Positions 597 to 46,163 of a stretch of DNA of 64,000 bases are shown here, in pieces. The stretch covers positions 248,001 to 312,000 of the forward strand of contig NIVC01000800.1 in assembly GCA_002269645.1 (NCBI GenBank), written 5' to 3'. The notes beneath the pieces were generated by a model. The model was not told where the DNA came from, searched no databases, and worked only from the letters and a program-made list of their open reading frames with translations. This DNA comes from Macrostomum lignano. Its lineage: Eukaryota. Each line of letters starts with the position of its first letter. Position 1 is the stretch's first letter. The translations under genes and the position numbers were made by a program.

Positions 597-604
597 GTGG
601 GTAG

Positions 605-1035
605 CTCACCGACCCACTCACTGAACCACTCACTGACCCACTCACTGACTCACTGACCCACTCACTGACTCACTGACCCACTCACTAACTCACCGACTCA
701 CTCACTGACCCACTCACTGACTCACTGACCCACTCACTCACTCACTGACCCACTCACTCACTCACTGACCCACTCACTCACTCACTGACACACTCACTCA
801 CTCACTGACCCACTCACTCACTCACTGACCCACTCACTGACTCACTGGCCCACTCACTCACTCACTGACCCACTCACTGACCCACTCACTGACTCACTCA
901 CTGACTCACTCACTGACCCACTCACTGACCCACTCACTGACTCACTCACTGACTCACTCACTGACCCACTCACTCACTGACCCACTCTTATCCCAATCGC
1001 TGACCTACTGACTCACTCGCATTCAATAACTGACC
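605..1035. repeat. CACT/CTGACC-based intronic minisatellite
   Basis: Mixed cactcactga(c/ccc) units fill most of intron 597-1063. Confidence 0.95.
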
Positions 1036-1063
1036 CATTCGCTTCTTCAATTTGCCGCTGCAG

Positions 1064-1303
1064 GCGCCGGCGACGCCCCAGCACCAGCAGCAGCCGCAGG
1101 CACCGCAGAACCGCAGCAGCCTGCGGGTGTGCGGCTGGGCGCGGGTTCTCTACAACTACGACTCTCGGCAGCCGGACGAGCTGACGGTGCGCGAAGGCGA
1201 CGTGCTCAGCGTGCTGGAGAAGAGCGCCGACGGCTGGTGGCTGGGCGAGGACTCAACGGGCAGGCGGGGCATCTTCCCGGGCTCCTACGTGGAGGAGTTC
1301 TGA
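1064..1303 (+). CDS. Terminal exon encoding a C-terminal SH3 domain (architecture as in F-BAR/SH3 adaptors such as Nostrin/PSTPIP; orthology not established)
   Basis: ARVLYNYDSRQPDELTVREGDVLSVLEKSADGWWLGEDSTGRRGIFPGSYVEEF* has the SH3 hallmarks (LYxY, ELT, GWW, GxFPxxYV). Acceptor ctgcAG at 1062-1063, stop TGA at 1301-1303. Confidence 0.9.
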   Translation, partial: APATPQHQQQPQAPQNRSSLRVCGWARVLYNYDSRQPDELTVREGDVLSVLEKSADGWWLGEDSTGRRGIFPGSYVEEF

Positions 1304-1437: not shown

Positions 1438-1743
1438 TGCCGATATGTATCGAAAGTAATAGAATGACAATATATAAGTGAGTCATATGCGAGTGTGTGT
1501 TTTATACAGTGCCGATATGTATCGAAAGTAGTTTTTAAATAAACGAAAAACTTACTAAAAGCATGATTATTATTATTAATCTGGGTGTTGCCGATATGTA
1601 TCGATAGCAAAGTAATGACCAGTTCTAAGTTCACTTATTGCACGTGTTTTTACATTGCCGATATGTATCGATAGTAATTTTAAAATCCACCATTTAAAAA
1701 CTAGTAAATTGCTTGGAATTTTCACATTGCCAATATGTATCTC
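1438..1743. repeat. Five regularly spaced copies of a 16-bp palindromic core TGCCGATATGTATCGA
   Basis: Cores start at 1438, 1510, 1589, 1656 (identical) and 1728 (3 mismatches). Spacers are 56, 63, 51 and 56 bp. Internal dyad CGATA-TG-TATCG. An AATAAA lies near 1538. Confidence 0.9.
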
Positions 1744-2294
1744 CAATTCTAATCACGGAGTGAACTGTGAAAGCTGAACTCTTTCACTCACGCTTGGCTG
1801 GCTCCTCAACTCACCAATCCGATTGTTTTTAAAGCTTGAATTGCCTTTATTTTGTTTGCATAGTTAGTTATTCTTTCTACTCCAGTTTTGTTCTACTGTT
1901 AGTAGGCTGATTTAGATAGTGTGCACATTTGCGCATTTTTATGCTAAATTTGCTATTTATTAAGAAATTATTTGCTGTGTAATTTTTTGTTCACCTTCCT
2001 GTCCAAAAAATGTGTTATTTTGAGTCCTTTTTATTCCCCGTGAGCCGGCATGATTTCTATTAAATTGTTGCATTAACTGCCTTGTCGGCCCGTGCAAACC
2101 CACGGGCTCTGCATGACCACTTAGAGATCTGTGCTTGCTTTTATTACAATCCGCTTATTCCCGTTGCTTCTTCGTCTGAAACTGGAGCGTCCACAGCTTT
2201 TTGTGTAAATGAATATGCGGCATCAACCAGCTGCATGAATGCGTATTATGGCTCAGTATTTGCTTAATCAGCTCATCCACAGTAATTGGTGCCT

Positions 2295-8086: not shown

Positions 8087-8412
8087 AGCCAGCCAGCTGC
8101 TCTCCAGCAGGCCACTTAGCGAATCAATACCCAGGCAGTGGCTCATTGAACCCAGGCAGCCAATGAAGCCGCGGCTTAACGCTTGAAGGCCCGGCCAAGG
8201 GTCTGGGGTGGTGAAGCCCTGGCTGGCCAGGGGGGAGCGGAAGGCGCTCTCTCATATGAGGCCGCTCTCTGCCCGCCTTAGCCCGTAATTACGCGGCTTC
8301 CCAAGTGTAATTCTCCCTCACCGCAACTCCAGTAGGACTGTCGGCTTGTTGAAGCGCCCGCGCGATAATCCGGAGCACTTCGAGCAGAGAGTGACTTCGG
8401 GCTTTGATTTTT

Positions 8413-8447
8413 CTAACTTCATTTTTTCCAAACCGCCTGTGCAGCAG
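8413..8447 (+). promoter_or_regulatory. Branch point, pyrimidine tract and NAGNAG 3' splice site upstream of the paralog A start (5'UTR intron or trans-splice acceptor)
   Basis: CTAAC at 8413, then ttcattttttcc, then tgtgCAG|CAG at 8442-8447; the ATG in gccaccaagATGG is at 8490. Confidence 0.55.
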
Positions 8448-8489
8448 CGGAGAGCTCTGAGGTCCGGCAGCCGCTCAGCAGCCACCAAG

Positions 8490-8807
8490 ATGGAGCAGCA
8501 GCAGCAGCTAAAGATGAAAATCAAGAGGCGCTCAAGAAGCTCCTGTGAGGTGCTCAACGACGGCGATGTCGCTGCTAAGGAAGAATTCTCGCCGACAGCA
8601 TCGTCTGAGGAAGCTGGAACAGATGCTTCATCTACCTGCAGTTCAGAGGCGGTCTCGACCTCCGCGCTGAAGGAGAACTCGGACGAGACCTCCAACGGGC
8701 CAACCACTTCATCTTCAGCCTCCTCGAGTTCTTCATCATCCACCAGCTTAGGCAGGCTGGAGAGGCCAACGTCTGCGGGGAAGAAATTGCCCCGAGCAGT
8801 GGCTGAG
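8490..8807 (+). CDS. sbb: brakeless/scribbler (ZNF608/609-like) paralog A, first visible coding exon
   Basis: MEQQQQLKMKIKRR... carries the LKMKIKR motif shared with paralog B. Strong Kozak context. Donor GAG|GTGAGC at 8808, phase 0. Confidence 0.7.
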
Positions 8808-8924
8808 GTGAGCAACTGCCGCGCCGATCGCTTGACTAAAGTTTTCCGTGTTATCTAGGAATTGCTGCTTTGAATACAAATGCAAAAGGGACTGCGAGGG
8901 GACAAATGGTTCAATAGGGGAGAG

Positions 8925-9170
8925 AAAAGAGGAGTGAGGGAGAAGGGAGAGAGGAGAGGGGAGAAGGGAGAGAGGAGAGGGGAGAAGGGAGAGAGGAGAG
9001 GGGAGAAGGGAGAGAGGAGAGGGGAGAAGGGAGAGAGGAGAGGGGAGAAGGGAGAGAGGAGAGGGGAGAAGGGAGAGAGGAGAGGGGAGAGGGGAGAAGG
9101 GAGAGAGGAGAAGGGAGAGAGGAGAAGGGAGAGAGGAGAGGGGAGAGGGGAGAAGGGAGAGAGGAGTGGG
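8925..9170. repeat. GA-rich minisatellite, 21-bp unit
   Basis: AGAAGGGAGAGAGGAGAGGGG tandem copies in intron 1 of paralog A. Confidence 0.9.
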
Positions 9171-9747
9171 GAGGTGCAGTTAGGCGATGGGGTGCTCAAA
9201 GGGCCATCAAAAAGCTCCCCTCCCTGGATTTGGGATTTTAGCACCAAGGGGGATTGTGTCAGGATTCATGGGACGGCTGAGGCTCTGGGGCGGGGCGGAT
9301 TTTTAGGGAGCAACTCTCCCGCTCAGCTGCTGCTTAACCCTCCCCATCGCCTTCCTCAGACACGGGCCTCAACTCGTCTCGCCCCAGCATCCTGAAGCCG
9401 CCTCATCTCTCTTCCTCTCTCTTCCCCTCCCCCTGGCAGCCGTGGGCGCTCTCACTCCACCAGCTCAGCCCAGCAGCCTCACACGAGCCGCCCAGCCTCA
9501 GCCATGCCAACGCCAGGAGCCGCGGTTCCCAAGGGGCGACTCGGCACTGCCCGATTTCTTGCCCTTCTCTCCCCCCGCTCTGATCCCCCAGTCAGCTGGG
9601 TGTGTGCGCGAGTGTGTGAGTGCTGCTTCCCCAAATGGGATCCCGATTCTCTCTCTCATCCCCCCTATAAGCCACTCGTCTGTCTTCGGCAAACCCCCTG
9701 AGCAGTAGCGGAATTATTCTTGTGAGAGCTGCTTGAGGAGCTGGCCA

Positions 9748-9788
9748 GTGTGTGTGTGTGTGTGTGCGTGTGTGTGTGTGCGTGTGTG

Positions 9789-9832
<44 letters not shown>
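9748..9832. repeat. (TG)n microsatellite
   Basis: TG run with a few CG interruptions. Confidence 0.97.
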
Positions 9833-9833
<1 letters not shown>

Positions 9834-9919
9834 CCGGGCGATTTCAATTTCTTGTCGCCAATAGACGTGTCAATTGGGCATCAACACCCTCCTCACCCGC
9901 CCGTCCTGCTCCTGACTGA

Positions 9920-10597
9920 ATAGGGTGACTGAGTGATTGGGTGACTGAATGATTGGGTGACTGAGTGATTGGGTGACTGAGTGATTGGGTGACTGAGTGA
10001 TTGGGTGACTGAATGATTGGGTGACTGAGTGATTGGGTGACTGAGTGATTGGGTGACTGAATGATTGGGTGACTGAGTGATTGGGTGACTGAGTGATTGG
10101 GTGACTGAATGATTGGGTGACTGAGTGATTGGGTGACTGAGTGATTGGGTGACTGAGTGACCGGGTGACTGAGTGACTGGGTGACTGAGTGACTGGGTGA
10201 GTGATCGGGTGACCGAGTGACTGAGTGACTGGGTGACTGAGTGACTGGGTGAGTGATCGGGTGACCGAGTGACTGAGTGACTGAGTGACTGAGTGACTGG
10301 GTGAGTGAGTGACTGAGTGACTGAGTGACTGGGTGAGTGAGTGACTGAGTGACTGAGTGACTGAGTGACTGAGTGAGTGAGTGAGTGAGTGACTGAGTGA
10401 CTGAGTGACTGAGTGACTGAGTGACTGAGTGACTGAGTGACTGAGTGACTGAGTGACTGAGTGACTGAGTGACTGATCGGGTTACTGAGTGACTGATCGA
10501 GTGACGAGTGACTGAGTGATTGAGTGACTGAGTGACTAAGTGACTGAGTGACTGAGTGACTGAGTGACTGAGTGACTGAGTGACTGAGTGACTGAGT
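9920..10597. repeat. GAGT/GACT/GATTGGGT compound minisatellite
   Basis: Reverse-complement relative of the 605-1035 array. Confidence 0.93.
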
Positions 10598-11179
10598 GAC
10601 CCAGAGCAGGCAGTTGCCGAAGCCCCATTATGCAATTTGGAAGGGTTCATTGATGCCTGATGATATTGAAATCCAGCTCGGGGTTCGAGAGGCACTCTGG
10701 AGTGTGCTCATGCTGTTTTGCCGGCAGCTGTTTGCGGGGAATTTGCCGCCTGTGTCTGCTTGCCAGCATATTTAATCCGCCGCCCTTTTCTCTCCTTCTC
10801 CTCTCTTCTTCCTCTGCTCTTGCCTTCTTCTAGTAGCAGCAGCAGCAGAGCCAGCAAATCATTCTTTGCGGAAGTTGTCAGAGCCGTGGCTCCCGCTGTG
10901 TGAGAGCGGGTGGGACAGGGGGGGGGGCTGCGGCCCGGGCCATTGGCCTCTGCGGCCTTCTGGATTGTTCCAGTTCCTGCTGCTGCTAGTAGCAACTCAG
11001 CTATTGAGGCTTTATCTCTAGCCTCCTTATATCCCCTCTGCGTCCGCTTGCCTCCACGGAATTTTATTTATCCCATTGGCTCACATTAACTCAAGACTTC
11101 CCTGTCTTCTGCCACATATCGGAAGCCATATTTATTGGGGTTTCTCTCGGTTTAAAAATATTGCTCGGCATTTAGTTAG

Positions 11180-11505
<326 letters not shown>

Positions 11506-11741
11506 GGCTAGTTAGTTAGAATCGGGGTCAGACAAAAAACAGACTGACAGCGCGGGCTCCGTACTGAATTATGCATACGGCCTGTTTTTATTAGCCCCGC
11601 TGTTGAGCTCACGCGCTCAGCGCAGCACTGCGGGGGCCGTGACAGCTGCTCATTCTCAATTTGCGGCAGTTGCGGCGTCTGCTCCTTCATGCGCTGTGCT
11701 AAGCATTCACCTCCCGGCTTGCATATTAGCGGGAAATACAC

Positions 11742-12295
11742 AGAGAGATGGGGCGACAGGGAGACAGGGAGATGGGAAGACAGGGAGATGGGGAGACAGG
11801 GAGATGGGGAGACAGGGAGATGGGGAGACAGGGAGATGGGGAGACAGGGAGATGGGGAGACAGGGAGATGGGGAGACAGGGAGATGGGGAGACAGGGAGA
11901 TGGGGAGACAGGGAGATGGGGAGACAGAGAGATGGGGAGACAGGGAGATGGGGAGACAGGGAGATGGGGAGACAGGGAGATGGGGAGACAGGGAGATGGG
12001 GAGACAGGGAGATGGGGAGACAGGGAGATGGGGAGACAGGGAGATGGGGAAACAGGGAGATGGGGAGACAGGGAGATGGGGAGACAGAGAGATGGGGAGA
12101 CAGGGAGATGGGGAGACATGGAGATGGGGAGACAGGGAGATGGGAAGACAGGGAGATGGGGAGACAGGGAGATGGGGAGACAGGGAGATGGGGAGACAGG
12201 GAGATGGGGAGACAGGGAGATGGGGAGACAGGGAGATGGGGAGACAGGGAGATGGGGATACAGGGAGATGGGGAGACAGAGAGATGGGGAGACGA
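11742..12295. repeat. G-rich minisatellite, 16-bp unit
   Basis: GGGAGACAGGGAGATG tandem copies. Confidence 0.95.
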
Positions 12296-12539
12296 GGGAG
12301 CCTGGGAGGCAGAAGCCATTCGTTCCGCCTCACAGCTCCCGTGCCCTCCAAAAATTGGAAAAGCAGCTAGCTGGCTTTGTTCCAGAAACGTTTTTCACTG
12401 ATTTTTTCTGTCAAAGCAAAAAACAAAAACAGCGGATGCCATTGTTCTCCCAGCTTCAATTGCTTCGGTTGAAAATGAAACACTGAAGCGATCTCGTGGC
12501 TTCATGCTCCAGCTCCAACAGATCCAACCCGCATTGCAG

Positions 12540-12684
12540 GCCTCGTCCACCAAGAAGCTGAAGAAGGACTCCGCGGTGAACACGCAGTCAAAGGGCACCG
12601 CTACGGAGCCAGAGTGCTTGGGGCCCTGCGAACCGGGCACCAATATCAGCCTGGACGGCATCGTGTGGTTGGAGACGAACTCGG
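12540..12684 (+). CDS. sbb: brakeless/ZNF608-like paralog A, exon with the first half of the conserved domain
   Basis: [48 protein letters not shown](G) matches the family motif [24 protein letters not shown]. Acceptor ttgcAG at 12538-12539 (in-frame alternatives at 12512 and 12521); donor G|GTGAGC at 12685, phase 1. Confidence 0.9.
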
Positions 12685-12689
12685 GTGAG

Positions 12690-13418
12690 CCTTGTGGGGG
12701 TCATGAACTCGGGTGAGTGAGTCTCATGGGGGTCATGAACTCGGGTGAGTCTCATGGGGGGGGGTCATGAACTCGGGTGAGTGAGTCTCATGGGGGGGGT
12801 CATGAACTCGGGTGAGTGAGTCTCATGGGGGTCATGAACTCGGGTGAGTGAGTCTCATGGGGGTCATGAACTCGGGTGAGTGAGTTTCATGGGGGTCATG
12901 AACTCGGGTGAGTCTCATGGGGGGGTTCATGAACTCGGGTGAGTGAGTCTCATGGGGGTCATAAACTCGGGTGAGTGAGTCTCATGGGGGTCATGAACTC
13001 GGGTGAGTGAGTCTCATGGGGGTCATGAACTCGGGTGAGTCTCATGGGGGGGGGGGGGGGTTCATGAACTCGGGTGAGTGAGTCTCATGGGGGTCATGAA
13101 CTCGGGTGAGTCTCATGGGGGGGGGGTTCATGAACTCGGGTGAGTGAGTCTCATGGGGGTCATGAACTCGGGTGAGTCTCATGGGGGGGGGTTCATGAAC
13201 TCGGGTGAGTCTCATGGGGGTCATGAACTCGGGTGAGTCTCATGGGGGGGGGGTCATGAACTCGGGTGTTAGTCTCATGGGGGTCATGAACTTGGGTGAG
13301 TCTCATGGGGGGTCATGAACTCGGGTGAGTCTCATGGGGGGGGTCATGAACTCGGGTGAGTCTCATGGGGGGGGGTCATGAACTCGGGTGAGTCTCATGG
13401 GGGGGGTCATGAACTCGG
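12690..13418. repeat. Minisatellite whose unit contains the exon/intron junction (AACTCGG|GTGAGT)
   Basis: About 22 units of GGGGGTCATGAACTCGGGTGAGT(GAGT)CTCAT with variable G-run length, starting immediately after the real donor. Confidence 0.95.
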
Positions 13419-14108
13419 CCATTAGGTTCCATAAGCCCACAGCTGCAGGTCATAAGCTAAGGAGCTGTTAACAAAATGACACTTTTTAATCCTCTGCAAT
13501 TGAATCCCTCTAATGGCAGCTGGCGACAGCAGGCCAAAAAAACCAGCGACCATTTGTGCCCAAAACTTGGGTGACTGCATGGCGAATTCCGATCCCCAAC
13601 CCCTGATCCCCAGCTGCCTTCCCCGCTCCCCATCCCCCAGTCTGGCCGCCCGGACCCTTGTCGCTTTGGCTTTATCAACTTAGACCCTGGCAGCGCCGCC
13701 TGCCTGGGTAAATCGGGTTTTCCATCCGCCCAGATTCTCGGCTTCATCGCCTTCTACTTCTCCTTCGGCTTTGCTAAACCCACGCGCCCAGGGGGTAGCG
13801 ATGTAGCAGGACCTGGGGGCGCGGAGGCTGGGGATGGGGAGGCGGCAGTTCGGGGCGTGTGGGATCGGGATGCTGCACTGCGGAATGAGGAGGAGCGGCC
13901 GGGGGCTCGCCCGAGCCGGCTTATCTTGATTGATTTCCTAATATCCATTCGGCCATCCTCGGACAGACCTGTCTCTCCTGTGTGCCCTGTCCGCCTGTTT
14001 GGCCTGGCCCGCCCTGCCCCCACACTTGCTTGTATCTTAGCAGCACTCGCTCCTGAATGGTGGCCACATACTTGAATAAATTGAAGCTTGTGTTAGGGTG
14101 TAAAAGGG

Positions 14109-14386
<278 letters not shown>

Positions 14387-14839
14387 TCAAGGCACACTGA
14401 GCTCGGCAACCCGGAATCCCAATCAAAGCCCCCCCGCCACTGCTCAAGTGTGGGGAAGTTCGTGACTGTTGCATTTCTGTAGGCCGTGCGCCCCCCTCTC
14501 CTCGACCCCTAAGCCCGGCCGAGCTATGCCCGAGTTGCTTGCACCTTCGACCATCAATTTCCCTTTACCCCTATATCCTTCTCATTTTTCTAGAGAGAAA
14601 GAGAGAATACTCTTTAATGTGACAGGGGGCGGATGGAGCGCCTCCTGCTCGGCTCCCCACCTACTCCTCAGCTTCCTCTTTCCATCCTGTCTATTACGCA
14701 TGCCATCTTCTTCTTTTGCCTGCTAATAATATTTACTTTCAAAAGGAATTGGAATTTGGGGAGAAGGTGAGAAAATCGGAAGTGGAGAGAAAAAGGTACA
14801 TGTGAATGGGTGAGAGAGAGTGGGTGAGACCGGGGGAGG

Positions 14840-15490
14840 GGAGAAGAGAGATAAGGGAGAGAGGAGAGATAAGGGAGAGGGGAGATAAGGGAGAGAGGGG
14901 AGATAGCGGAGAGGGGAGATAAGGGAGAGGGGAGATAAGGGAGATAAGGGAGAGGGGAGATAAGGGAGAGGAGAGATAAGAGAGAGGGGAGATAAGGGAG
15001 AGGGGAGATAAGGGAGAGGGGAGATAAGGGAGAGGGGAGATAAGGGAGAGGGGAGATAAGGGAGAGGGGAGATAAGGGAGAGGGGAGATAAGGGAGAGGG
15101 TAGATAAGGAAGAGGGAAGATAAGGGAGATAAGGGAGAGGGGAGATAAGGGAGAGGGGAGATAAGGGAGAGGGTAGATAAGGAAGAGGGAAGATAAGGGA
15201 GATAAGGGAGAGGGGAGATAAGGGAGAGGGGAGATAAGGGAGATAAGGGAGAGGGGAGATAAGGGAGAGGAGAGATAAGAGAGAGGGGAGATAAGGGAGA
15301 GGGGAGATAAGAGAGAGGGGAGATAAGGGAGAGGGGAGATAAGGGAGAGGGGAGATAAGGGAGAGGGGAGATAAGGGAGAGGGTAGATAAGGAAGAGGGA
15401 AGATAAGGGAGATAAGGGAGAGGGGAGATAAGGGAGAGGGGAGATAAGGGAGAGGGGAGATAAGGGAGAGGGGAGATAAGGGAGAGAAGG
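14840..15490. repeat. GA-rich minisatellite, ~16-bp unit
   Basis: GGGAGATAAGGGAGAG tandem copies with higher-order variants. Confidence 0.93.
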
Positions 15491-15924
15491 GTGGGTAAGC
15501 GGTTAGGGAGAGAAGAAGAGAAGGAGAGCCAGCCAGTCAGACTGCTCAGTGCTCAGTCAGAACCGCAAGGATGCGGGGCAGAGGCAGGCTGGGAGCCGCC
15601 TTAATCAGGCACATAAGTGCCGAATGCTCCGAGCGCCGAACTCTAGGCCGATTCACCGGGAGGCACCGCGGCTCAGCTCGTTAATTATCCCCACTCCTCC
15701 CCATTCACTGCGCCCTTCCCATCCCGCCCGAACTATTTTGGCATCCATGCCGGCCAGTGCTCACACTGGGTCCCTGGGGCAGTTTATCTCCCTCCCATCT
15801 CTCTCTTCCCCAGCCAGTCTCCCCGCCTACATCTTCTGCCTTCTACTGCTTGCCAGCGATTCTGCAGCTGCATGGGCAATGCTGGCTTTCCTGCAACCAC
15901 CAGCTCTCAGTGACTGCGGTTCAT

Positions 15925-16437
15925 TGACCCATTGACCCACTGACCCACTGATCCCCTGACCCACTGATCCCCTGACCCACTGATCCCCTGACCCACTGAT
16001 CCCCTGACCCACTGATCCCCTGACCCACTGATCCCCTGACCCACTGATCCCCTGACCCACTGATCCCCTGACCCACTGATCCCCTGACCCACTGATCCCC
16101 TGACCCACTGATCCCCTGACCCACTGATCCCCTGACCCACTGATCCCCTAACCCACTGATCCCCTGACCCACTGATCCCCTGACCCACTGATCCCCGGAC
16201 CCACTGATCCCCTGACCCACTGATCCCCTGACCCACTGATCCCCTGACCTACTGCTTATCTGACCCACTGATCATCTGACCCCCTGATCCTCCCCCGACC
16301 CAATAATCCTCTGGCTCACTTATCCTCTGACTCACTGATCCCCTAACCCACTGATCCCCTGACCCACTGATCTTCTGACCCACTGATCCCCTGACCCACT
16401 GATCCCCTGACCCACTGATCCCCTGACCCACTGATCC
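15925..16437. repeat. Minisatellite, 16-bp unit, ending ~30 nt before the exon 3 acceptor
   Basis: GACCCACTGATCCCCT; each unit contains CCCTGAC and CACTGAT. Confidence 0.95.
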
Positions 16438-16467
16438 CAAAAGTCACTGAGCTCGCGAACCCCGCAG

Positions 16468-17506
16468 GCATGCTGGTGGTCAACGTGACCTGGCGCGGCC
16501 GCACCTACGTTGGCACCCTGCTGGACTCGTCTCAGCACGACTTCGCCGCTCCGCCTCCGGCGGCTTCATCATCGGGTTCCGCCGCTGACGTCGCAGTAGA
16601 CAGCGGCGGCGGTGGCAGCGACGGCGGCGGCAATAGCACCGAGGAATCTGGCTGCTCGAGCGCCAGCCGACGCAAAAGGCGAGCGGTGTCCTCCGGCGGC
16701 GGCAGCGGCGCCAAAAAGCAGAAAAGTCGGCCGCCGCAGGTCGGCCAGCAGCAGCAGAAGCGGCAGCCGGGAAGAGCCGGCGGGGACCCGCTGCCGGTCT
16801 GCTGCCCGCATCCCGACTGCTCGAAGCGCTTCGTCAGCATTCTGGCCATGAAGTGGCATCACAACGACTGCCACACTCGCCGGACGGAGCCGCCGCCCCC
16901 TCCGCCGCCCCCTCCGCCGCCCCCGCTGCCGCCCCTCCGCCGCCAGTGTTCAAAGTGCCGGAGCAGTGGAGGCCGGCCGTCTCGGTTTCTAAGAAATCCA
17001 AGCCGCAGCGGCATCAGTCCAGCTCACCGGCGGCTGCTGCTGCTGATGCAAAAGAGAGTCAGCTTCATCCGCAGCCTCCGCAGCCTCCAGCATCTAGTTC
17101 TCCGTCGTCTGTATCGCCAGCTGCCTCGCCGAAGCAGCAGCAACCGCCGCCGCCACCGCCGCCGCCGCTTCAACCGCCGGAGGAGGTTGTGACGTCATCC
17201 GATATGCCCCATCCGGCCCCTCCGTTGGCGGCTATGACTCAGCGGCATTCGCATCCGCTTCATCAACTCGGCCAGCTTCCGCCGCAGCAGCCGCATCCGC
17301 TTGCCAGATGGCCGCACTCGTTCGGCGCGGCGACAGACGATCAGCAGAAGCTGCAGTTCGAGCTGGAGCAGCTCCGCCTCATGGAGGCCGCCGCCGCCGC
17401 GTTCGCCGCCTTTCCTGGCCACCTGCCGGCCTTCCTCAGAGACCCCTTCGCATTTCCCTGTGAGTCTGCGGCCACTCCAGTCTGCGTCCCCCGTCTGTGT
17501 CCCTGA
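16468..17506 (+). CDS. sbb: brakeless/ZNF608-like paralog A, exon with MLVVNVTW domain, C2H2 finger and Pro/Gln-rich tail; 1-nt frameshift at 16932-16935
   Basis: Acceptor ccgcAG at 16466-16467; phase 1 gives [29 protein letters not shown]; finger CPHPDCSKRFVSILAMKWHHNDCH. The paralog-matching VFKVP segment lies in another frame (16853..17506 ORF). The exon ends at the stop at 17506 or at donor T|GTGAGT at 17460. Confidence 0.85.
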
Positions 17507-30892: not shown

Positions 30893-31904
30893 AGCAAGGA
30901 GTTCTAAGAAATTCACCAAAAGATACAATGAGCAAGCAATGCAAAATATTTTTCAGATTGCTATTTATATTTCAAATAAAAATCTACTGCATTTCGAAGA
31001 GCGACTCCTCAATAAAACAAATTAGCATTGATTGATGGAGTTTACATTACGAGAGACTGGAGCTGGGAATCGCTATTGTTGAGTCTGAGAGGCTGTATAA
31101 TGACGGAGCATGGAGTGAGAAAGAGAGTGGAGTAGCTCGTATTTTATAGCGGCAGATTTAATTGCGGTAACCGAAAGTTAGTATATTAGCTCGTAGTATT
31201 GCATTAGCCCAAGTATTTAAGCCCCCTGGGGCATGGCTGGGGAGGAGTTCTCTCTAGGATTTAGTGACAGTTAGTGAGTCACAGCGCACACGTTTGTAAT
31301 AATAATACTAGCTTTATATGTGCTTCTTTCTTTCTGTTGTGTATTAAGGGATTCAGCTTTTATCTGTCTGTCTGTCTGGCTGGCTGGGCCCCTACTTCCT
31401 CTCCTCTCTCCTCTCTCCTCTCCTCTTCCCCAGAAAAACCGCTAAAGCCTTCGCTCCCCCACCCCCACCCTATTTGCCGCAACTAGAGCTGAGATAGTGG
31501 GGGAAGAGAAAAACGCTTCGTTCGGGGATTCGACTGCTTTGCTGGCTGCTGCTGGGGTGCCCAAAAGATGGAGAGGATGGGGATGGGGAGTTAAGGTCGA
31601 AAAAAGAAGAGAAGGCCAAGACTGAGTGTATGAGTAGCGAGTAGCGACTAGAGAGAAAGAGAACGACTGAAATGAGATGAGCTATACAGAGCAGCAGACC
31701 CCAACAGAGTCATCAGGGATCTAATATTCAGAGTAAAATGATTCTGATTCCATGATTCTGATTCCCAATCCCAACCGAACCAAAGCAGGCCCATTTACAT
31801 CGATAGCCTAAAATAGCCTAACGTCTTATCATAATGCTTACGCATTATATTACGTCTTTCGACTGTTTTAGCTGTGCAAATAATAAAACTATTTTGGCGC
31901 TTAT

Positions 31905-34025
31905 CTTATCTATGGCGCTGTACAGTCACTGATTTTGGCGCTTATCTTATCTATGGCGCTGTACAGTCTCTAATTTTGGCGCCTATCTTATCTATGGCGC
32001 TGCACAGTCTCTAATTTTGGCGCCTATCTTATCTATGGCGCTGTACAGTCTCTAATTTTGGTGCTTATATTATCTATGGCGCTGTACAGTCTCTAATTTT
32101 GGCGCCTATCTTATCTATGGCGCTGCACAGTCTCTAATTTTGGTGCTTATATTATCTATGGCGCTGTACAGTCTCTAATTTTGGCGCCTATCTTATCTAT
32201 GGCGCTGCACAGTCTCTAATTTTGGTGCTTATATTATCTATGGCGCTGTACAGTCTCTAATTTTGGCGCCTATCTTATCTATGGCGCTGTACAGTCTCTA
32301 ATTTTGGTGCATATATTATCTATGGCGCTGTACAGTCTCTAATTTTGGTGCTTATATTATCTATGGCGCTGCACAGTCTCTAATTTTGGTGCTTATCTTA
32401 TCTATGGCGCTGTACAGTCACTGATTTTGGCGCTTATCTTATCTATGGCGCTGTACAGTCTCTAATTTTGGCGCCTATCTTATCTATGGCGCTGCACAGT
32501 CTCTAATTTTGGTGCTTATCTTATCTATGGCGCTGTACAGTCACTGATTTTGGCGCTTATCTTATCTATGGCGCTGTACAGTCTCTAATTTTGGCGCCTA
32601 TCTTATCTATGGCGCTGCACAGTCTCTAATTTTGGTGCTTATATTATCTATGGCGCTTATCTATGGCGCTGTACAGTCTCTAATTTTGGTGCTTATATTA
32701 TCTATGGCGCTGTACAGTCTCTAATTTTGGCGCCTATCTTATCTATGGCGCTGTACAGTCTCTAATTTTGGTGCTTATATTATCTATGGCGCTGTACAGT
32801 CTCTAATTTTGGTGCTTATATTATCTATGGCGCTGTACAGTCTCTAATTTTGGTGCTTATATTATCTATGGCGCTGTACAGTCTCTAATTTTGGTGCTTA
32901 TATTATCTATGGCGCTGTACAGTCTCTAATTTTGGTGCTTATATTATCTATGGCGCTGCACAGTCTCTAATTTTGGTGCTTATATTATCTATGGCGCTGT
33001 ACAGTCTCTAATTTTGGCGCCTATCTTATCTATGGCGCTGCACAGTCTCTAATTTTGGTGCTTATATTATCTATGGCGCTGTACAGTCTCTAATTTTGGC
33101 GCCTATCTTATCTATGGCGCTGCACAGTCTCTAATTTTGGTGCTTATATTATCTATGGCGCTTATCTATGGCGCTGTACAGTCTCTAATTTTGGTGCTTA
33201 TATTATCTATGGCGCTGTACAGTCTCTAATTTTGGCGCCTATCTTATCTATGGCGCTGTACAGTCTCTAATTTTGGTGCTTATATTATCTATGGCGCTGT
33301 ACAGTCTCTAATTTTGGTGCTTATATTATCTATGGCGCTGTACAGTCTCTAATTTTGGTGCTTATATTATCTATGGCGCTGTACAGTCTCTAATTTTGGT
33401 GCTTATATTATCTATGGCGCTGTACAGTCTCTAATTTTGGTGCTTATATTATCTATGGCGCTGCACAGTCTCTAATTTTGGTGCTTATATTATCTATGGC
33501 GCTGTACAGTCTCTAATTTTGGCGCCTATCTTATCTATGGCGCTGCACAGTCTCTAATTTTGGTGCTTATATTATCTATGGCGCTGTACAGTCTCTAATT
33601 TTGGCGCCTATCTTATCTATGGCGCTGCACAGTCTCTAATTTTGGTGCTTATATTATCTATGGCGCTGTACAGTCTCTAATTTTGGCGCCTATCTTATCT
33701 ATGGCGCTGTACAGTCTCTAATTTTGGTGCATATATTATCTATGGCGCTGTACAGTCTCTAATTTTGGTGCTTATATTATCTATGGCGCTTATATTATCT
33801 ATGGCGCTGCACAATCTCTAATTTTGGTGCTTATATTATCTATGGCGCTGTACAGTCTCTAATTTTGGCGCCTATCTTATCTATGGCGCTGTACAGTCTC
33901 TAATTTTGGTGCTTATATTATCTATGGCGCTGTACAGTCTCTAATTTTGGCGCCTATCTTATCTATGGCGCTGTACAGTCTCTAATTTTGGCGCCTGTCT
34001 TATCTATGTCGCCTATTCTGCTAAT
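31905..34025. repeat. Minisatellite, 41-bp unit (~52 copies)
   Basis: TTTTGGCGCCTATCTTATCTATGGCGCTGTACAGTCTCTAA alternating with a TTTTGGTGCTTATATT variant; recurrent deletion variants. Confidence 0.97.
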
Positions 34026-39724: not shown

Positions 39725-42700
39725 TTTATGTTTGACATGGTGGCTCTTCTATGTTTGACATGGACACATGGTGTCTCTTCTATGTTTGACATGGTGGCTC
39801 TTCTATGTTTGACATGGTAGCTCTTTAATGTTTGACATGGAGTCACGTATATGTTTGACATAGTGGCTCTTTAATGATTAACATCGTGGTTCTTTAATGT
39901 TTGACATGGTGGCTCTTTAATGTTTGACATGGTGTCTCTGTTATGTTTGACATGGTGGCTCAGTTGTTCGACATGGTGTCTCTTCTATGTTTGACATGGT
40001 GGCTCTTTTGTGTTTGACATAGTGGCTCTTTAATGTTTGACATGGTGGCTCTTCTATGTTTGACATGGTAGCACTTTAATCTTCGACATGGTGGCTCTTT
40101 AATTTTTGACATTGTGGCTCTTTAATGTTTGATATGGTGGATCTATTATGTTTGACATGGTGGCTCTTTAATTTTTGACATTGTGGCCCTTTAATGTTTG
40201 ATATGGTGGCTCTTTTATGTTTGACATGGTGGCTCTTTAATGTTTGACATGGAGTAATGTATATGCTTGACGTGGTGGTTCTTTTATGGTTGACATGGTG
40301 GCTTTTTTATGTTCGACATGGTGGCTCTTTTATGTTTGGCATGGTGGCTCTTTTATGTTCGACATGGTGGCTCAATAATGTTTGACATGGTGGCTCTTTT
40401 ATGTTCGACATGGTGGCTCTTTTATGTTTGGCATGGTGGCTCTTTAATGTCTGACATGGTGGCTCAATAATGTTCGACATGGTGGCTCTTTTATGTTTGA
40501 CATGCTGGCTCTTTAATGTTTGACATGGTGGCTCTTTAATGTTTGGCATGGTGGCTCTTTAATGTTTGACATGGTGGCTCTTTTATGTTTGACATGGAGT
40601 AATGTATATGCTTGACGTGGTGGTTCTTTTATGGTTGACATGGTGGCTCTTTTATGTTCGACATGGTGGCTCTTTTATGTTTGGCATGGTGGCTCTTTAA
40701 TGTTTGGCATGGTGGCTCTTTAATGTTTGACTTGGTGGCTCTTTAATATTTGACATGGTGGCCCTTTTATGTTCGACATGGTGGCTCTTCAATGTTTGAC
40801 ATGGTACCTCTTTTATGTTCGACATAGTGGCTCTTTAATGTTTTACATGGTGGCTCTTTAATGTTTGGCATGGTGGCTCTTTAATGTTTGACATGGTGGC
40901 TCTTTTATGTTTGACATGGAGTAATGTATATGCTTGACGTGGTGGTTCTTTTATGGTTGACATGGTGGCTCTTTTATGTTCGACATGGTGGCTCTTTTAT
41001 GTTTGGCATGGTGGCTCTTTAATGTTTGGCATGGTGGCTCTTTAATGTTTGACTTGGTGGCTCTTTAATATTTGACATGGTGGCCCTTTTATGTTCGACA
41101 TGGTGGCTCTTCAATGTTTGACATGGTACCTCTTTTATGTTCGACATAGTGGCTCTTTAATGTTTTACATGGTGGCTCTTTAATGTTTGACATGGTGACT
41201 CTTTTATGTTCTTCATGGTAGATCTTTTATGTTTGACATGGTGGCTCTTTAATGTTCGACATGGTGGCTCTTTAATGTTTGACATGGTGGCTCTTTACTT
41301 TTCGAAATGGTGGCTCTGTTTTATGTTTGACATGGTGGCTCTTTAATGTTCGACATAGTGGCTCTTTAATGTTTTTATTGGTGTCTGTTTTATGTTTGAC
41401 ATGGTGGCTCTTTAATGTTCGACATGGTGGCTCTTTAATGTTTGACATGGTAGTTCTTTTATGTTTGATATGGTGGCTCTTTTATGTTCGACATGGTGGC
41501 TCTTTAATGTTTGACATGGTGGCTCTTTTAGGTTTGAAATGGTGGCTCTTTTGTGTTTGACATTGTGGCTCTTTAATGTTTGACATGGTGGCTCTTCTAT
41601 GTTTGACATGGTAGCACTTTAATCTTCGACATGGTGGCTCTTTAATTTTTTACATTGTGGCTCTTTAATGTTTGATATGGTGGCTCTTTTATGTTTGACA
41701 TTGTGGCTCTTTAATGTTTGACATGGAGTAATGTATATGCTTGACGTGGTGGTTCTTTTATGGTTGACATGGTGGCTTTTTTATGTTTGACATGGCGGCT
41801 CTTTTATGTTTGGCATGGTGGCTCTTTTATGTTCGACATGGTGGCTCAATAATGTTCGACATGGTGGCTCTTTTATGTTTGACATGGTGGCTCTTTAATG
41901 TTCGACATGGTGGCTCTTTTATGTTTGGCATGGTGGCTCTTTAATGTCTGACATGGTGGCTCAATAATGTTCGACATGGTGGCTCTTTTATGTTTGACAT
42001 GCTAGCTCTTTAGTGTTTGACATGCTGGCTCTTTAATGTTTGACATGGTGGCTCTTTAATGTTTGGCATGGTGGATCTTTAATGTTTGACATGGAGTAAT
42101 GTATATGCTTGACGTGGTGGCTCTTCTATGTTTGACATGGACACATGGTGTCTCTTCTATGTTTGACATGGTGGCTCTTTAATGTTTGACATGGAGTAAT
42201 GTATATGCTTGACGTGGTGGTTCTTTTATGGTTGACATGGTGGCTTTTTTATGTTTGACATGGCGGCTCTTTTATGTTTGGCATGGTGGCTCTTTTATGT
42301 TCGACATGGTGGCTCAATAATGTTCGACATGGTGGCTCTTTTATGTTTGACATGGTGGCTCTTTTATGTTCAACATGGTGGCTCTTTTATGTTTGGCATG
42401 GTGGCTCTTTAATGTCTGACATGGTGGCTCAATAATGTTCGACATGGTGGCTCTTTTATGTTTGACATGCTGGCTCTTTAATGTTTGACATGGTGGCTCT
42501 TTAATGTTTGACATGGTGGCTCTTTAATGTTTGGCATGGTGGCTCTTTAATGTTTGACATGGTGGCTCTTTTATGTTTGACATGGAGTAATGTATATGCT
42601 TGACGTGGTGGTTCTTTTATGGTTGACATGGTGGCTCTTTAATATTTGACATGGTGGCCCTTTTATGTTCGACATGGTGGCTCTTCAATGTTTGACATGG

Positions 42701-43880
42701 TACCTCTTTTATGTTCGACATAGTGGCTCTTTAATGTTTTACATGGTGGCTCTTTAATGTTTGACATGGTGACTCTTTTATGTTCTTCATGGTAGATCTT
42801 TTATGTTTTGACATGGTGGCTCTTTAATGTTCGACATGGTGGCTCTTTAATGTTTGACATGGTGGCTCTTTACTTTTCGAAATGGTGGCTCTGTTTTATG
42901 TTTGACATGGTGGCTCTTTAATGTTCGACATAGTGGCTCTTTAATGTTTTTATTGGTGTCTGTTTTATGTTTGACATGGTGGCTCTTTAATGTTCGACAT
43001 GGTGGCTCTTTAATGTTTGACATGGTAGTTCTTTTATGTTTGATATGGTGGCTCTTTTATGTTCGACATGGTGGCTCTTTAATGTTTGACATGGTGGCTC
43101 TTTTAGGTTTGAAATGGTGGCTCTTTTGTGTTTGACATTGTGGCTCTTTAATGTTTGACATGGTGGCTCTTCTATGTTTGACATGGTAGCACTTTAATCT
43201 TCGACATGGTGGCTCTTTAATTTTTGACATTGTGGCTCTTTAATGTTTGATATGGTGGCTCTTTTATGTTTGACATTGTGGCTCTTTAATGTTTGATATG
43301 GTGGTTCTTTTATGGTTGACATGGTGGCTTTTTTATGTTTGACATGGCGGCTCTTTTATGTTTGGCATGGTGGCTCTTTTATGTTCGACATGGTGGCTCA
43401 ATGATGTTCGACATTGTGGCTCTTTTATGTTTGACATGGTGGCTCTTTAATGTTCGACATGGTGGCTCTTTAATGTTTGACATGGTGGCTCTTTTAGGTT
43501 TGAAATGGTGGCTCTTTTGTGTTTGACATTGTGGCTCTTTAATGTTTGACATGGTGGCTCTTCTATGTTTGACACGGTAGCACTTTAATCTTCGACATGG
43601 TGGCTCTTTAATTTTTGACATTGTGGCTCTTTAATGTTTGATATGGTGGCTCTTTTATGTTTGACATTGTGGCTCTTTAATGTTTGATATGGTGGTTCTT
43701 TTATGGTTGACATGGTGGCTTTTTTATGTTTGACATGGCGGCTCTTTTATGTTTGGCATGGTGGCTCTTTTATGTTCGACATGGTGGCTCAATGATGTTC
43801 GACATTGTGGCTCTTTTATGTTTGACATGGTGGCTCTTTAATGTTCGACATGGTGGCTCTTGTATGTTTGACATTGCGCT
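39725..43880. repeat. ~4.1-kb minisatellite, 24-bp unit, with higher-order duplications
   Basis: ATGTTTGACATGGTGGCTCTTT(A/T)A; identical variant blocks offset by 1575 bp and 391 bp. Confidence 0.98.
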
Positions 43881-43935
43881 TCTTGTATGTTTAGCAGTTT
43901 TTTGTTTTTAAGGTGTTTTAATAAAAAAATCATTT

Positions 43936-45764: not shown

Positions 45765-46163
45765 ATGTCGTCCGTTGAACAATTAACAACTATCGACAGA
45801 GCTATCGTCGAACCCAATCCGTCCGGGACGACCGCGTCAGACTCGTTTTCAAATTGGGACCTACTAGGCGACCTAATGATCGACTTAGGCGGCGGCAACA
45901 CCGGCCCGGCGGACCAGGGGCCGCTGAAGATGCAGAATAGTTCCGCCTCGGAGAATCTGGCCCCGGCAACAAAGCCGGACTCTGACAAAGGCCTCGTTTT
46001 AAAGATGAAAATCAAGCGCAAATCTAAGAATGAAGAGAAGCACGAAATTGTCACGCCAGATATGGAGAAATACCGATTATTGTCAGCGCCATCTGTCAAG
46101 CTGGAAGAAGCAGACTCATCCGCTACTCATGCTCCCGCGGCTAAGAAGTCTCGGCCAGATAAG
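45765..46163 (+). CDS. sbb: brakeless/scribbler (ZNF608/609-like) paralog B, exon 1
   Basis: NWDLLGDLMIDL resembles the family N-terminal W..G.LIIDL motif; also VLKMKIKRK. Donor AAG|GTAAGC at 46164, phase 0. Confidence 0.85.

What the first reader, a model, noticed from the sequence alone, without database searches (positions are those of the whole stretch)
1438..1743. Regularly interspaced palindromic 16-bp core conserved while spacers diverged
Seen: four identical TGCCGATATGTATCGA cores and one degenerate last copy, at periods of 72, 79, 67 and 72 bp. Each has the dyad CGATA-TG-TATCG. The layout looks CRISPR-like, but the spacers are not independent: spacer 1 resembles spacer 3 (aagtaat..aatgac..taagt..gtgt.tttt.ac) and spacer 2 resembles spacer 4 (ttttaaa..aaaaact.a.taaa..gc.tg). 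This points to an old ~145-bp dimeric duplication in which only the cores stayed invariant. Inference: purifying selection on a homotypic protein-binding site. Established: cores 3 and 4 end in TATCGATA, the Drosophila DRE bound by DREF, and clustered CGATA is the BEAF-32 insulator motif. Both proteins have BED fingers. The cluster lies at the 3' end of the SH3 gene, upstream of the sbb domain, so it could be a boundary element or a repeated 3'UTR element.
Basis: partly seen in the sequence, partly recalled or inferred. Interest (0 to 1): 0.72.

Follow-up and report, generated by a model that had tools for sequence, protein, structure and literature searches.

The report
Conserved palindromic core in decayed repeat

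Summary
Four exact TGCCGATATGTATCGA cores lie at 1438, 1510, 1589 and 1656, and a degenerate fifth at 1728. Nothing else in the 64 kb matches within 3 mismatches. The array is two copies of an A-B dimer of about 146 bp, plus a decayed fifth unit of A type. Spacers 1/3 and 2/4 are related; A and B spacers are no more alike than shuffled sequence. Between the dimers the cores match at 32/32 positions, against 86/140 elsewhere (Fisher p about 1e-6, columns chosen post hoc). TRF tandem repeats cover 46% of the window, yet this is its only array with exact cores and diverged spacers. It starts 135 nt after the stop codon of an SH3-domain gene and about 6.6 kb upstream of an sbb/ZNF608-609-like gene. 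The DREF/BEAF-32 reading is weak. TATCGATA occurs in only two units and lies partly outside the invariant block. The BEAF dual-core spacing is not met, and protein comparisons suggest the genome is not Drosophila. Best reading: a multimerised binding site kept by purifying selection. I lean slightly to a DNA-level dimeric factor (0.38) over a 3'UTR RNA element (0.30). A transposon relic or concerted evolution is not excluded. No related genome could be reached, so function is untested.

The parts
1064..1303 (+). Last coding exon of an SH3-domain gene. The stop codon is at 1301-1303. The upstream exon runs from about 303 to 596, and the intron 597-1063 is filled by a minisatellite.
   Evidence: Translation; Pfam SH3_1/SH3_9/SH3_2 hits; generic SH3 matches in the PDB; minisatellite at 605-986.
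1438..1588 (+). Dimer copy 1: unit 1 (A type, 72 nt) plus unit 2 (B type, 79 nt).
1589..1727 (+). Dimer copy 2: unit 3 (A type, 67 nt) plus unit 4 (B type, 72 nt).
1438..1453 (+). Core 1, TGCCGATATGTATCGA, exact. Followed by AAGTAAT.
1510..1525 (+). Core 2, exact. Followed by AAGTAGT.
1589..1604 (+). Core 3, exact. Followed by TAGCAAA. TATCGATA lies at 1599-1606.
1656..1671 (+). Core 4, exact. Followed by TAGTAAT. TATCGATA lies at 1666-1673.
1728..1771 (+). Decayed fifth unit of A type. The core reads TGCCAATATGTATC, with CpG changed to CpA. A deletion of about 15 nt then removes the right half-site. After that, CCAATTCTAATCAC resembles CCAGTTCTAAGTTCAC of unit 3.
   Evidence: (s3/s5 z=2.2).
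1538..1543 (+). The only + strand AATAAA between the stop codon and 2400. It lies inside unit 2. A CA at 1561-1562 and the U/GU-rich stretch 1563-1589 follow it. This is a candidate poly(A) site that would separate cores 1-2 from cores 3-5.
   Evidence: sequence. Its use is inferred, not shown.
2059..2064 (+). ATTAAA, an alternative distal poly(A) signal. If it is used, the whole array is in the 3'UTR.
   Evidence: Inferred.

Best explanation
The array is a locally generated tandem duplication that has aged. A unit of about 72 bp gave an A-B dimer of about 146 bp, and the dimer duplicated to at least 2.5 copies. The spacers drifted by substitutions and indels, and a fifth unit decayed. Four copies of a block of about 22 bp, centred on the dyad CGATA-TG-TATCG, were kept identical by purifying selection. 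I take the block to be the recognition site of one sequence-specific factor, multimerised four times. My slight preference is that it acts in DNA: a homotypic cluster of sites for a dimeric or oligomeric DNA-binding protein, working as an enhancer or boundary-type element in the 3' flank of the SH3 gene, between that gene and the sbb/ZNF608-609-like gene. A BED-finger protein is possible but untested. Shown: the repeat anatomy, the rate heterogeneity, the decay of the fifth copy, the position relative to the genes, and the uniqueness within the window. Inferred: selection rather than gene conversion, action in DNA rather than RNA, and any identity of the factor.
For: - The cores are invariant (32/32 between dimers and 64/64 across the four copies). 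Spacers are 61% identical with gaps and 70% without, and A and B spacers are at shuffle level.
- All 8 CpGs of the four cores are retained, in DNA whose non-repeat CpG o/e is 0.76 against GpC 1.26. The one copy that lost its right half-site by deletion also carries a CpG-to-CpA change.
- The conserved block of about 22-24 bp is roughly centred on a 5-2-5 dyad, which is the size and shape of a dimeric protein footprint.
- A DNA-level site explains equal conservation of all four cores whichever poly(A) signal is used.
- It is the only array in the window with exact 14-mers recurring at 40-250 bp in DNA that TRF does not call, among 55 ordinary arrays.
- No known RNA family, tRNA or significant spacer structure competes.
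- There is precedent that BED-finger oligomers read clustered or inverted CGATA (PMC2605929; PMC7471704).
Against: - There is no binding, accessibility or cross-species evidence; only one genome was available.
- The dyad alone has about a 4% chance expectation.
- Outside the 5-bp arms the conserved flanks are not symmetric: TGC on the left against A(A/T)AG on the right.
- The array sits 135 nt after a stop codon, with no poly(A) signal before it. At least cores 1-2 are therefore almost certainly transcribed, which suits an RNA-level element as well.
- The central TG makes the 12-mer a perfect RNA palindrome on the sense strand only.
- The A,A,T,T pattern at position +17 hints at conversion or parallel change rather than simple conservation.
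- The p-values use columns chosen after seeing the data.
Confidence: 0.38

Rival explanations
1. RNA-level element of the SH3 gene's 3'UTR. The four cores would be multimerised sites for an RNA-binding factor or a small RNA. Alternatively they pair with one another: CGAUAUGUAUCG is perfectly self-complementary with two central G.U pairs. That would give 12-bp helices (1:2, 3:4 or 2:3) that recruit a dsRNA-binding protein, gate the poly(A) signal at 1538, or link transcripts.
For: - The array starts 135 nt after the stop codon, and there is no AATAAA or ATTAAA before 1538, so cores 1-2 at least should be in the mRNA.
- In the minimum-free-energy fold of the whole array, cores 1:2 and 3:4 pair as 12-bp stems. 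Sense-strand dimer segments fold at -21.4 and -23.6 kcal/mol (z -2.2 and -2.4), against -12.0 and -18.9 for the antisense.
- The block length of about 22 nt matches a small-RNA footprint.
- Each core carries UGUA, and UAUGUAU fits the loose U-R-U-R-U-R-U pattern (sequence; motif knowledge is mine).
- Architectural precedents exist: the Xist A region, with 8-9 repeats, U-rich spacers and inter-repeat pairing (PMC2796953), and the NORAD repeat units (PMC5828396).
Against: - The good-looking poly(A) site inside unit 2 (AATAAA at 1538, CA at 1561, GU-rich to 1589) would leave the equally conserved cores 3-4 outside the mRNA.
- The core stems follow trivially from one self-complementary word. No covariation is possible, and 0 of 20 predicted pairs are compensatory.
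- The whole array folds at z=-0.97, and the spacers alone at z between -1.05 and +0.69.
- There is no Rfam match.
- Linear RNA-binding-protein sites are usually 4-8 nt, not 16-22.
Confidence: 0.3
2. No host function. The array would be a relic of a mobile or satellite-type repeat, for example subterminal transposase-binding repeats or a MITE or Helitron-type element with internal tandem repeats. Alternatively the cores are kept alike by short-tract gene conversion (concerted evolution) rather than by selection.
For: - The genome makes tandem arrays at an extreme rate: 46% of the window, 55 arrays.
- Position +17 is A,A,T,T in units 1-4. This contradicts the spacer relationships (1~3, 2~4) and needs either parallel change or conversion between neighbours.
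- BED fingers, which read CGATA-type words, come from hAT transposases (PMC7471704).
- An unrelated plant-like contig, L081, carries the same 16-mer as 20-nt inverted arms of a small MITE-like structure, so such words do occur in mobile elements.
- A 64-kb window cannot reveal a family of moderate copy number.
Against: - No terminal inverted repeats bracket the array in 1304-2300.
- No second copy or inverted copy of the core lies within 3 mismatches in 64 kb.
- No sequence from 1300-2300 recurs elsewhere in the window.
- No transposase or reverse-transcriptase-like ORFs were seen (by inspection).
- Identity falls off sharply within a few bases of the block. Conversion tracts would have to be about 24 bp and always in register.
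- The internal tandem repeats of such elements are normally similar over the whole unit.
Confidence: 0.2
3. One reading: a DREF (DRE) and/or BEAF-32 (clustered CGATA) site cluster acting as a Drosophila-type insulator or promoter element.
For: There are 10 CGATA motifs on either strand in 1441-1673, the densest cluster in the window. Two perfect TATCGATA lie at 1599 and 1666. The 'single element' criterion of at least 3 CGATA in 200 bp is met twice (PMC2605929).
Against: - The invariant word is not the DRE: 2 of 5 units have it, and units 1-2 read TATCGAAA.
- The dual-core architecture with a spacer of about 200 bp is absent; the largest gap is about 67 bp.
- Single elements are reported to be poor predictors of BEAF binding in vivo.
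- BEAF-32 is reported only in the genus Drosophila, and the window's proteins have no close relative among annotated insects.
- The human DREF homologue prefers TGTCG(C/T)GA(C/T)A, which is not present.
Confidence: 0.05
4. Neutral accident: an ordinary decaying minisatellite in which the cores escaped mutation by chance.
For: Tandem duplication is commonplace here. The tests are post hoc and rest on one locus.
Against: Fisher p=1.2e-6. P(32/32)=1.4e-5 at ungapped spacer identity. Two exact runs of 17 or more have p about 0.003, and those two runs are also identical to each other even though A and B spacers are at shuffle level. The eight CpGs, the most mutable sites, are all intact.
Confidence: 0.05

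Closest known systems
BEAF-32 CGATA clusters and the DREF DRE (TATCGATA) of Drosophila
   Same: Clustered CGATA in both orientations with AT-rich DNA between them. Two units contain a perfect DRE. The location is intergenic, between two genes.
   Different: The conserved word is a 16-22-nt asymmetric block, not CGATA or the DRE. The dual-core spacing is absent. The array lies at a 3' end, not at a known TSS. The genome is probably not Drosophila, and BEAF-32 is genus-specific.
Homotypic insulator or enhancer arrays built on repeats, such as the gypsy Su(Hw) site array, the CTCF-site repeats of the H19 imprinting control region with A/B-type units, and the Xenopus rDNA 60/81-bp enhancer repeats (my own knowledge, not checked here)
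   Same: A short invariant protein-binding core is reiterated in direct orientation inside longer, diverged, AT-rich or alternating repeat units.
   Different: No factor, footprint or activity is known here. There are only four intact copies, and the site lies within a probable 3'UTR.
Xist A-repeat region
   Same: Conserved cores separated by U-rich, divergent spacers. Function has been proposed to depend on pairing between repeats (PMC2796953). Here adjacent cores can form 12-bp helices on the sense strand.
   Different: There is no sequence similarity. Here the pairing is a trivial property of a single palindromic word with no covariation support, and the setting is an mRNA 3' region rather than a lncRNA.
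NORAD repeat units, and the classical duplicated 3'UTR control elements hunchback NREs and tra-2 TGEs (the latter two from my own knowledge)
   Same: An old tandem duplication in which short protein-binding motifs stay conserved while the rest drifts (PMC5828396). The elements lie in a 3' non-coding region.
   Different: The core is not a Pumilio element: UGUAUCGA against UGUANAUA. The units are about 72 nt rather than about 300 nt. Transcription of all copies is unproven.
Transposon subterminal binding-site repeats (hAT, CACTA, Mutator) and MITEs or Helitron-type elements with internal tandem repeats (my own knowledge)
   Same: A short motif reiterated at irregular or regular spacing, possibly a BED-finger target.
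   Different: No termini, no inverted copies and no other family member in the window. The dimer duplication happened in situ or before insertion, and this cannot be told apart with 64 kb.
CRISPR array
   Same: At first sight, a short palindromic repeat at regular spacing.
   Different: The locus is eukaryotic, with spliced genes. The spacers are homologous to one another (1~3, 2~4). The core is 16 nt with spacers of about 56 nt. No cas context is present and Rfam gives only noise.

Membership tests
BEAF-32 binding element | Cluster of at least 3 CGATA motifs within 200 bp ('single element') | tested here: met
   10 CGATA/TATCG motifs at 1441-1673: 4 in 1441-1524 and 6 in 1592-1673. Definition taken from PMC2605929.
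BEAF-32 binding element | Dual-core signature: two CGATA clusters bracketing a CGATA-free AT-rich spacer of about 200 bp (the predictor of in-vivo binding) | tested here: not met
   The largest CGATA-free gap is about 67 bp (1525-1591). Spacer GC is 0.27. PMC2605929 reports that single elements are poor predictors of in-vivo binding.
BEAF-32 binding element | Host encodes BEAF-32 (reported only in the genus Drosophila) | tested here: inconclusive
   The taxon was not identified. The SH3 protein has no hit. The sbb-like protein's best full-length match is a tick protein at 35%; the insect clusters are 67-71% identical in the core domain. This argues against Drosophila. BEAF-32 distribution is from PMC4208683.
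DRE / DREF site | Palindromic octamer TATCGATA as the conserved unit | tested here: not met
   Present only at 1599 and 1666. Units 1-2 read TATCGAAA and unit 5 TATCTCCA. The last two bases of the octamer fall outside the invariant 16-mer. Definition from PMC7471704.
DRE / DREF site | Promoter-proximal position upstream of a TSS | not testable with these tools
   No transcript data. The array is 135 nt 3' of a stop codon and about 6.6 kb upstream of the first recognisable sbb-like exon.
CRISPR array | Unrelated spacers and a prokaryotic context with cas genes | tested here: not met
   Spacers 1/3 and 2/4 are homologous. The locus has spliced animal genes. The only CRISPR-DR Rfam hit is noise, lies outside the array at 2166-2182, and scores 16.9 bits against a threshold of 35.
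Ordinary minisatellite | Head-to-tail units similar over their whole length (detectable by TRF) | tested here: not met
   TRF reports nothing at 1438-1743 at a minimum score of 30. It is the only chain of exact 14-mers in DNA that TRF does not cover, among 55 TRF arrays.
Transposon subterminal repeats / MITE | Terminal inverted repeats or target-site duplication bracketing the motif cluster, or inverted copies at the other end | tested here: not met
   No bracketing inverted repeat in 1304-2300. No inverted core within 3 mismatches in 64 kb.
Transposon subterminal repeats / MITE | Many dispersed copies sharing a longer consensus | not testable with these tools
   Only 64 kb of this genome is available. 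There are 0 further copies here. Scans of metagenome and viral collections returned only single chance 16-mer hits.
Known structured RNA, miRNA or tRNA-derived repeat | Match to an Rfam model or a tRNA, or a significant fold | tested here: not met
   No gathering-level Rfam hit in the window, and only noise at E of 2.5 or more in 1200-2300. No tRNA. The array folds at z=-0.97, and the spacers at z between -1.05 and +0.69.
Multimerised RNA platform (Xist A-repeat or NORAD type) | Conserved cores in diverged spacers with potential for inter-repeat pairing | tested here: met
   The pairing is in silico only and follows from the palindromic word.
Multimerised RNA platform (Xist A-repeat or NORAD type) | All copies lie in one transcript | not testable with these tools
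   AATAAA at 1538 splits the array. ATTAAA at 2059 would include all of it. There are no expression data.

The most novel reading that the evidence does not exclude
The 12-nt centre of the core is a perfect RNA palindrome on the sense strand only, with G.U at the centre. Four copies in one 3'UTR would then form a multivalent self-pairing module. It could form alternative intramolecular helices (1:2, 2:3, 3:4) that hide or expose the poly(A) signal lying between cores 2 and 3. It could also form intermolecular duplexes that cluster transcripts of the same gene. This would be an mRNA-encoded 'velcro' kept by selection.
Probability: 0.07. Interest if true: 0.7.

Novelty: new member of a known kind. 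Interest (0 to 1): 0.36.

Why it matters
If the cores are a selected binding-site array, they give a ready-made 22-nt bait for finding a sequence-specific factor in a poorly sampled animal lineage. The factor could be an architectural or enhancer protein, or a 3'UTR regulator. The locus also has a natural internal control: the decayed fifth copy and the drifting spacers. In a genome where nearly half the DNA is young minisatellite, it also shows what an old, functionally retained tandem duplication looks like. As it stands this is a single-locus candidate, not a new class.

Tried and rejected
- **Orthologous loci through proteins.** The spliced SH3 C-terminus gave no hit at E<=1e-5. The sbb-like N-terminus gave only distant relatives. 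No congener DNA could therefore be fetched, and conservation across species is untested.
- **Exact 16-mer scans of public DNA.** The metagenome scan returned 120 or more stretches, each a single hit, and the viral scan returned 7. None has an array. blast of 1400-1800 against all fetched loci extends the match by only a few bases. L081 carries the word as 20-nt inverted arms in a plant-like contig; I judged this unrelated. A two-core pattern would have been a better use of the single metagenome scan.
- **Third protein search, not run.** I considered searching with the spurious minus-strand ORF over the array (1329-1634). I left it out because the species and its near relatives are evidently absent from that database, and a core of about 6 residues cannot reach significance there.
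- **Known RNA classes.** CRISPR, miRNA cluster, tRNA-derived repeat and other known RNA families were rejected.
- **Structured spacers.** Rejected.
- **Transposon termini.** None found.
- **Literature search for the word.** Only two 12-mer coincidences in unrelated papers (human cancer-cell and Pseudomonas studies), which I did not open.
- **Taxon clues.** There are no telomere-type repeats. CpG o/e of 0.76 is suggestive of methylation but not decisive.
- **Second CGATA cluster at 49.5 kb.** It is an unrelated degenerate repeat of about 24 bp.

Full report
**1.

The word TGCCGATATGTATCGA occurs exactly at 1438, 1510, 1589 and 1656. A 3-mismatch copy, TGCCAATATGTATCTC, lies at 1728, so the periods are 72, 79, 67 and 72. 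No other match within 3 mismatches exists on either strand of the 64 kb. Dinucleotide shuffles expect 0.27 matches, and none of 100 gave 5.

Anchoring the five copies on the core shows that the conserved block is longer than 16 nt. It reads tTGCCGATATGTATCGA(A/T)AG(T/C)A, about 22-24 nt. Three of the upstream spacer ends also share TTTT(A/T/C)(T)ACA(G/T). The dyad CGATA-TG-TATCG is in all four intact copies. A 5+5 dyad in a 16-mer of this composition has about a 4% chance expectation, so it is only a mild signal.

**2. Anatomy: a decayed higher-order tandem repeat**

- blastn aligns 1437-1540 with 1588-1686 at 75% identity, E=7e-13.
- With cores removed, spacer 1 against spacer 3 scores z=4.5 against shuffles (p<0.001), and spacer 2 against spacer 4 scores z=2.3 (p=0.03).
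- All A-versus-B spacer pairs sit at the null, with z between -0.8 and 0.1.

Dimer 1 is 151 nt and dimer 2 is 139 nt.

The fifth copy is not just a degenerate core. It is a decayed A-type unit. It carries a CpG-to-CpA change and a deletion of about 15 nt that removes the right half-site. Downstream, CCAATTCTAATCAC still resembles CCAGTTCTAAGTTCAC of unit 3 (s3/s5 z=2.2). The array was once at least 2.5 dimers long, and the fifth unit shows what unconstrained decay looks like at this locus.

**3. Rate heterogeneity**

In the dimer-dimer alignment the two cores match at 32/32 positions, against 86/140 for all other columns. Fisher gives p=1.2e-6, with columns chosen after seeing the data. Ungapped spacer identity is 0.70, which gives P(32/32)=1.4e-5. 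Under uniform identity, two exact runs of 17 or more occur with p about 0.003. The A-unit and B-unit cores are also identical to each other, although their spacers are no more alike than shuffled sequence.

The array holds 11 CpGs and 8 of them are the two per core. CpG o/e is 1.51 in the array and 0.75 in the spacers. In the window's non-repeat DNA it is 0.76, against GpC 1.26. The most mutable dinucleotides are therefore exactly the ones retained.

One detail cuts across simple conservation. Position +17 is A,A,T,T in units 1-4. That conflicts with the 1~3, 2~4 spacer history and needs parallel change or short-tract conversion. The T state creates the only two TATCGATA in the window, at 1599 and 1666.

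**4. Context**

Translation of 1064-1303 gives ...RVCGWARVLYNYDSRQPDELTVREGDVLSVLEKSADGWWLGEDSTGRRGIFPGSYVEEF*, an SH3 domain (Pfam SH3_1, E=1.4e-16). Against the PDB it looks like a generic SH3 domain. The array begins 135 nt after the stop codon.

Between the stop codon and 2400, the + strand has one AATAAA at 1538, inside unit 2, followed by a CA at 1561 and U/GU-rich sequence up to 1589. It has one ATTAAA at 2059. Cores 1-2 are therefore almost certainly transcribed. Cores 3-5 are transcribed only if the distal signal is used.

Downstream lie about 6.6 kb that are mostly minisatellite. After that come the exons of an sbb/ZNF608-609-like gene (about 8346-8858 and 16470-17500) and a second tandem paralogue (about 45765-46200 and 46948-48807).

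TRF arrays cover 46% of the window, in 55 merged arrays. Among 1586 chains of exact 14-mers recurring at 40-250 bp, the only ones in DNA that TRF does not call are the four overlapping 14-mers of this core. TRF itself reports nothing at 1438-1743, even at a minimum score of 30. Tandem duplication is routine in this genome. An old array with invariant cores is not.

**5. Which organism?**

- The spliced SH3 C-terminus has no hit at E<=1e-5 among 5.8 billion proteins.
- The best full-length match to the sbb-like N-terminus is a tick protein, 35% identical over 91% of the query.
- The best domain-only match is Ciona savignyi at 80%.
- The 90%-identity cluster that holds Gryllus and Anopheles proteins is 71% identical to the window, and the cluster that holds a Coptotermes protein is 67% identical.
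- The window's two paralogues replace the DCTRHDWAPPRF that most of the aligned tick, termite and ostracod homologues share with DSS(R/Q)HDFA(P/A)P.

I infer a poorly sampled or fast-evolving bilaterian, and very probably not Drosophila. The taxon remains unidentified.

**6. What it is not**

- **Not CRISPR.** The locus is eukaryotic and spliced, and the spacers are homologous to one another.
- **Not a known RNA.** There is no Rfam hit at gathering level, only noise at E of 2.5 or more in 1200-2300, and no tRNA.
- **Not a structured RNA array.** The whole array folds at z=-0.97 and the spacers alone at z between -1.05 and +0.69.
- **Not a recognisable transposon.** No inverted repeats bracket the array, there is no inverted core, and nothing from 1300-2300 recurs elsewhere in the window. 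However, 64 kb cannot exclude a dispersed family.
- **No related array in public collections.** Exact-word scans of metagenome and viral collections returned only single chance hits. One plant-like contig, L081, has the word as 20-nt inverted arms. I regard that as unrelated.

**7. The DREF/BEAF reading**

According to PMC2605929, BEAF binding in vivo needs a dual core: two clusters of CGATA bracketing a CGATA-free AT-rich spacer of about 200 bp. Isolated clusters of 3 or more CGATA are poor predictors of binding. Here there are 10 CGATA motifs in about 230 bp, so the cluster count is met. The largest CGATA-free gap is only about 67 bp. BEAF-32 is reported to be restricted to the genus Drosophila (PMC4208683).

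The DRE is TATCGATA, and human ZBED1 prefers TGTCG(C/T)GA(C/T)A (PMC7471704). Only two units here carry TATCGATA, and the octamer runs beyond the invariant block. The specific identification is therefore not supported. The more general idea, that an oligomeric DNA-binding protein (perhaps BED-type) reads inverted CGATA pairs, remains possible.

**8. Mechanism**

The shown steps are the local tandem duplication, long residence with spacer drift, the loss of one copy, and strict retention of four blocks of about 22 nt. The inferred step is purifying selection on a multimerised recognition site.

*For action in DNA.* The block has footprint size and is centred on a dyad. All four copies are conserved equally whichever poly(A) site is used.

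*For action in RNA.* The array sits in the probable 3'UTR. The central TG makes CGAUAUGUAUCG a perfect 12-nt RNA palindrome on the sense strand only. In the minimum-free-energy fold of the whole array, cores 1:2 and 3:4 pair as 12-bp stems. Sense segments fold at -21.4 and -23.6 kcal/mol, against -12.0 and -18.9 for the antisense.

That pairing is a trivial property of a single word, and none of the 20 predicted pairs shows a compensatory change.

My estimates are:

| Reading | Probability |
|---|---|
| DNA-level protein-site array | 0.38 |
| RNA-level 3'UTR element | 0.30 |
| Transposon relic or concerted evolution without host function | 0.20 |
| DREF/BEAF specifically | 0.05 |
| Chance | 0.05 |

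**9. Comparison and novelty**

The architecture, conserved cores in drifting repeat units, is known in DNA. Examples are the gypsy Su(Hw) array, the H19 ICR CTCF repeats and the rDNA enhancer repeats (all from my own knowledge). It is also known in RNA: the Xist A region (PMC2796953) and the NORAD repeat units (PMC5828396).

This is at most a new member of that known kind. It rests on one locus in one genome. Interest is moderate to low until a genome-wide census, congener alignments, transcript ends and a pulldown are available.

Noticed in passing
window 1-64000: TRF tandem repeats cover 46% of the window, in 55 merged arrays with units of 7 to about 123 bp. The arrays fill introns and intergenic DNA. 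This is an unusually minisatellite-rich gene region.
   Followed up: partly
window 8346-17500 and 45765-48807: There are two tandem paralogues of an sbb/ZNF608-609-like gene on the + strand, with very different intron sizes (about 7.6 kb against about 0.5 kb). Both replace the DCTRHDWAPPRF motif that most aligned homologues share with DSS(R/Q)HDFA(P/A)P.
   Followed up: partly
window 597-1063: The last intron of the SH3 gene is almost entirely a 12/20-bp minisatellite, CTCACTGACCCACTCACTCA (605-986).
   Followed up: no
window 49508-49985: A degenerate repeat of about 24 bp (CTCTAGACACGATAGATTAT) lies in the 3' flank of the second sbb-like paralogue. It is the second-densest CGATA cluster in the window (5 per 320 bp) and is unrelated to the 16-mer core.
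   Followed up: partly
window 1454, 1526, 1605, 1672 (position +17 of units 1-4): The base after the core is A,A,T,T in units 1-4. This contradicts the spacer relationships (1~3, 2~4). It implies parallel mutation or short-tract conversion between neighbouring cores. The T state creates the only two TATCGATA in the window.
   Followed up: partly
window 39766-43892 and 31891-34012: The first region is a very long array of a 23-bp unit (179 copies, 81% matches). The second is a higher-order array with periods of 41 and 123 bp (92% matches at the 123-bp period).
   Followed up: no
window, non-repeat DNA (34.4 kb): CpG o/e is 0.76 against GpC o/e of 1.26. This moderate CpG depletion is compatible with germline methylation and is unlike what I recall for Drosophila.
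   Followed up: partly
L081 494-598 (Ga0058698_10056318): A plant-like, AT-rich metagenome contig carries the same 16-mer inside 20-nt inverted arms, 65 nt apart, forming a MITE-like structure. I judged it a coincidence of the exact-word search.
   Followed up: partly
window 1526-1556: The AAUAAA at 1538 sits in the 9-nt loop of a predicted 10-bp A/U hairpin directly after core 2. Unit 4 keeps an analogous A/U hairpin with a different loop. Neither fold is significant against shuffles.
   Followed up: partly
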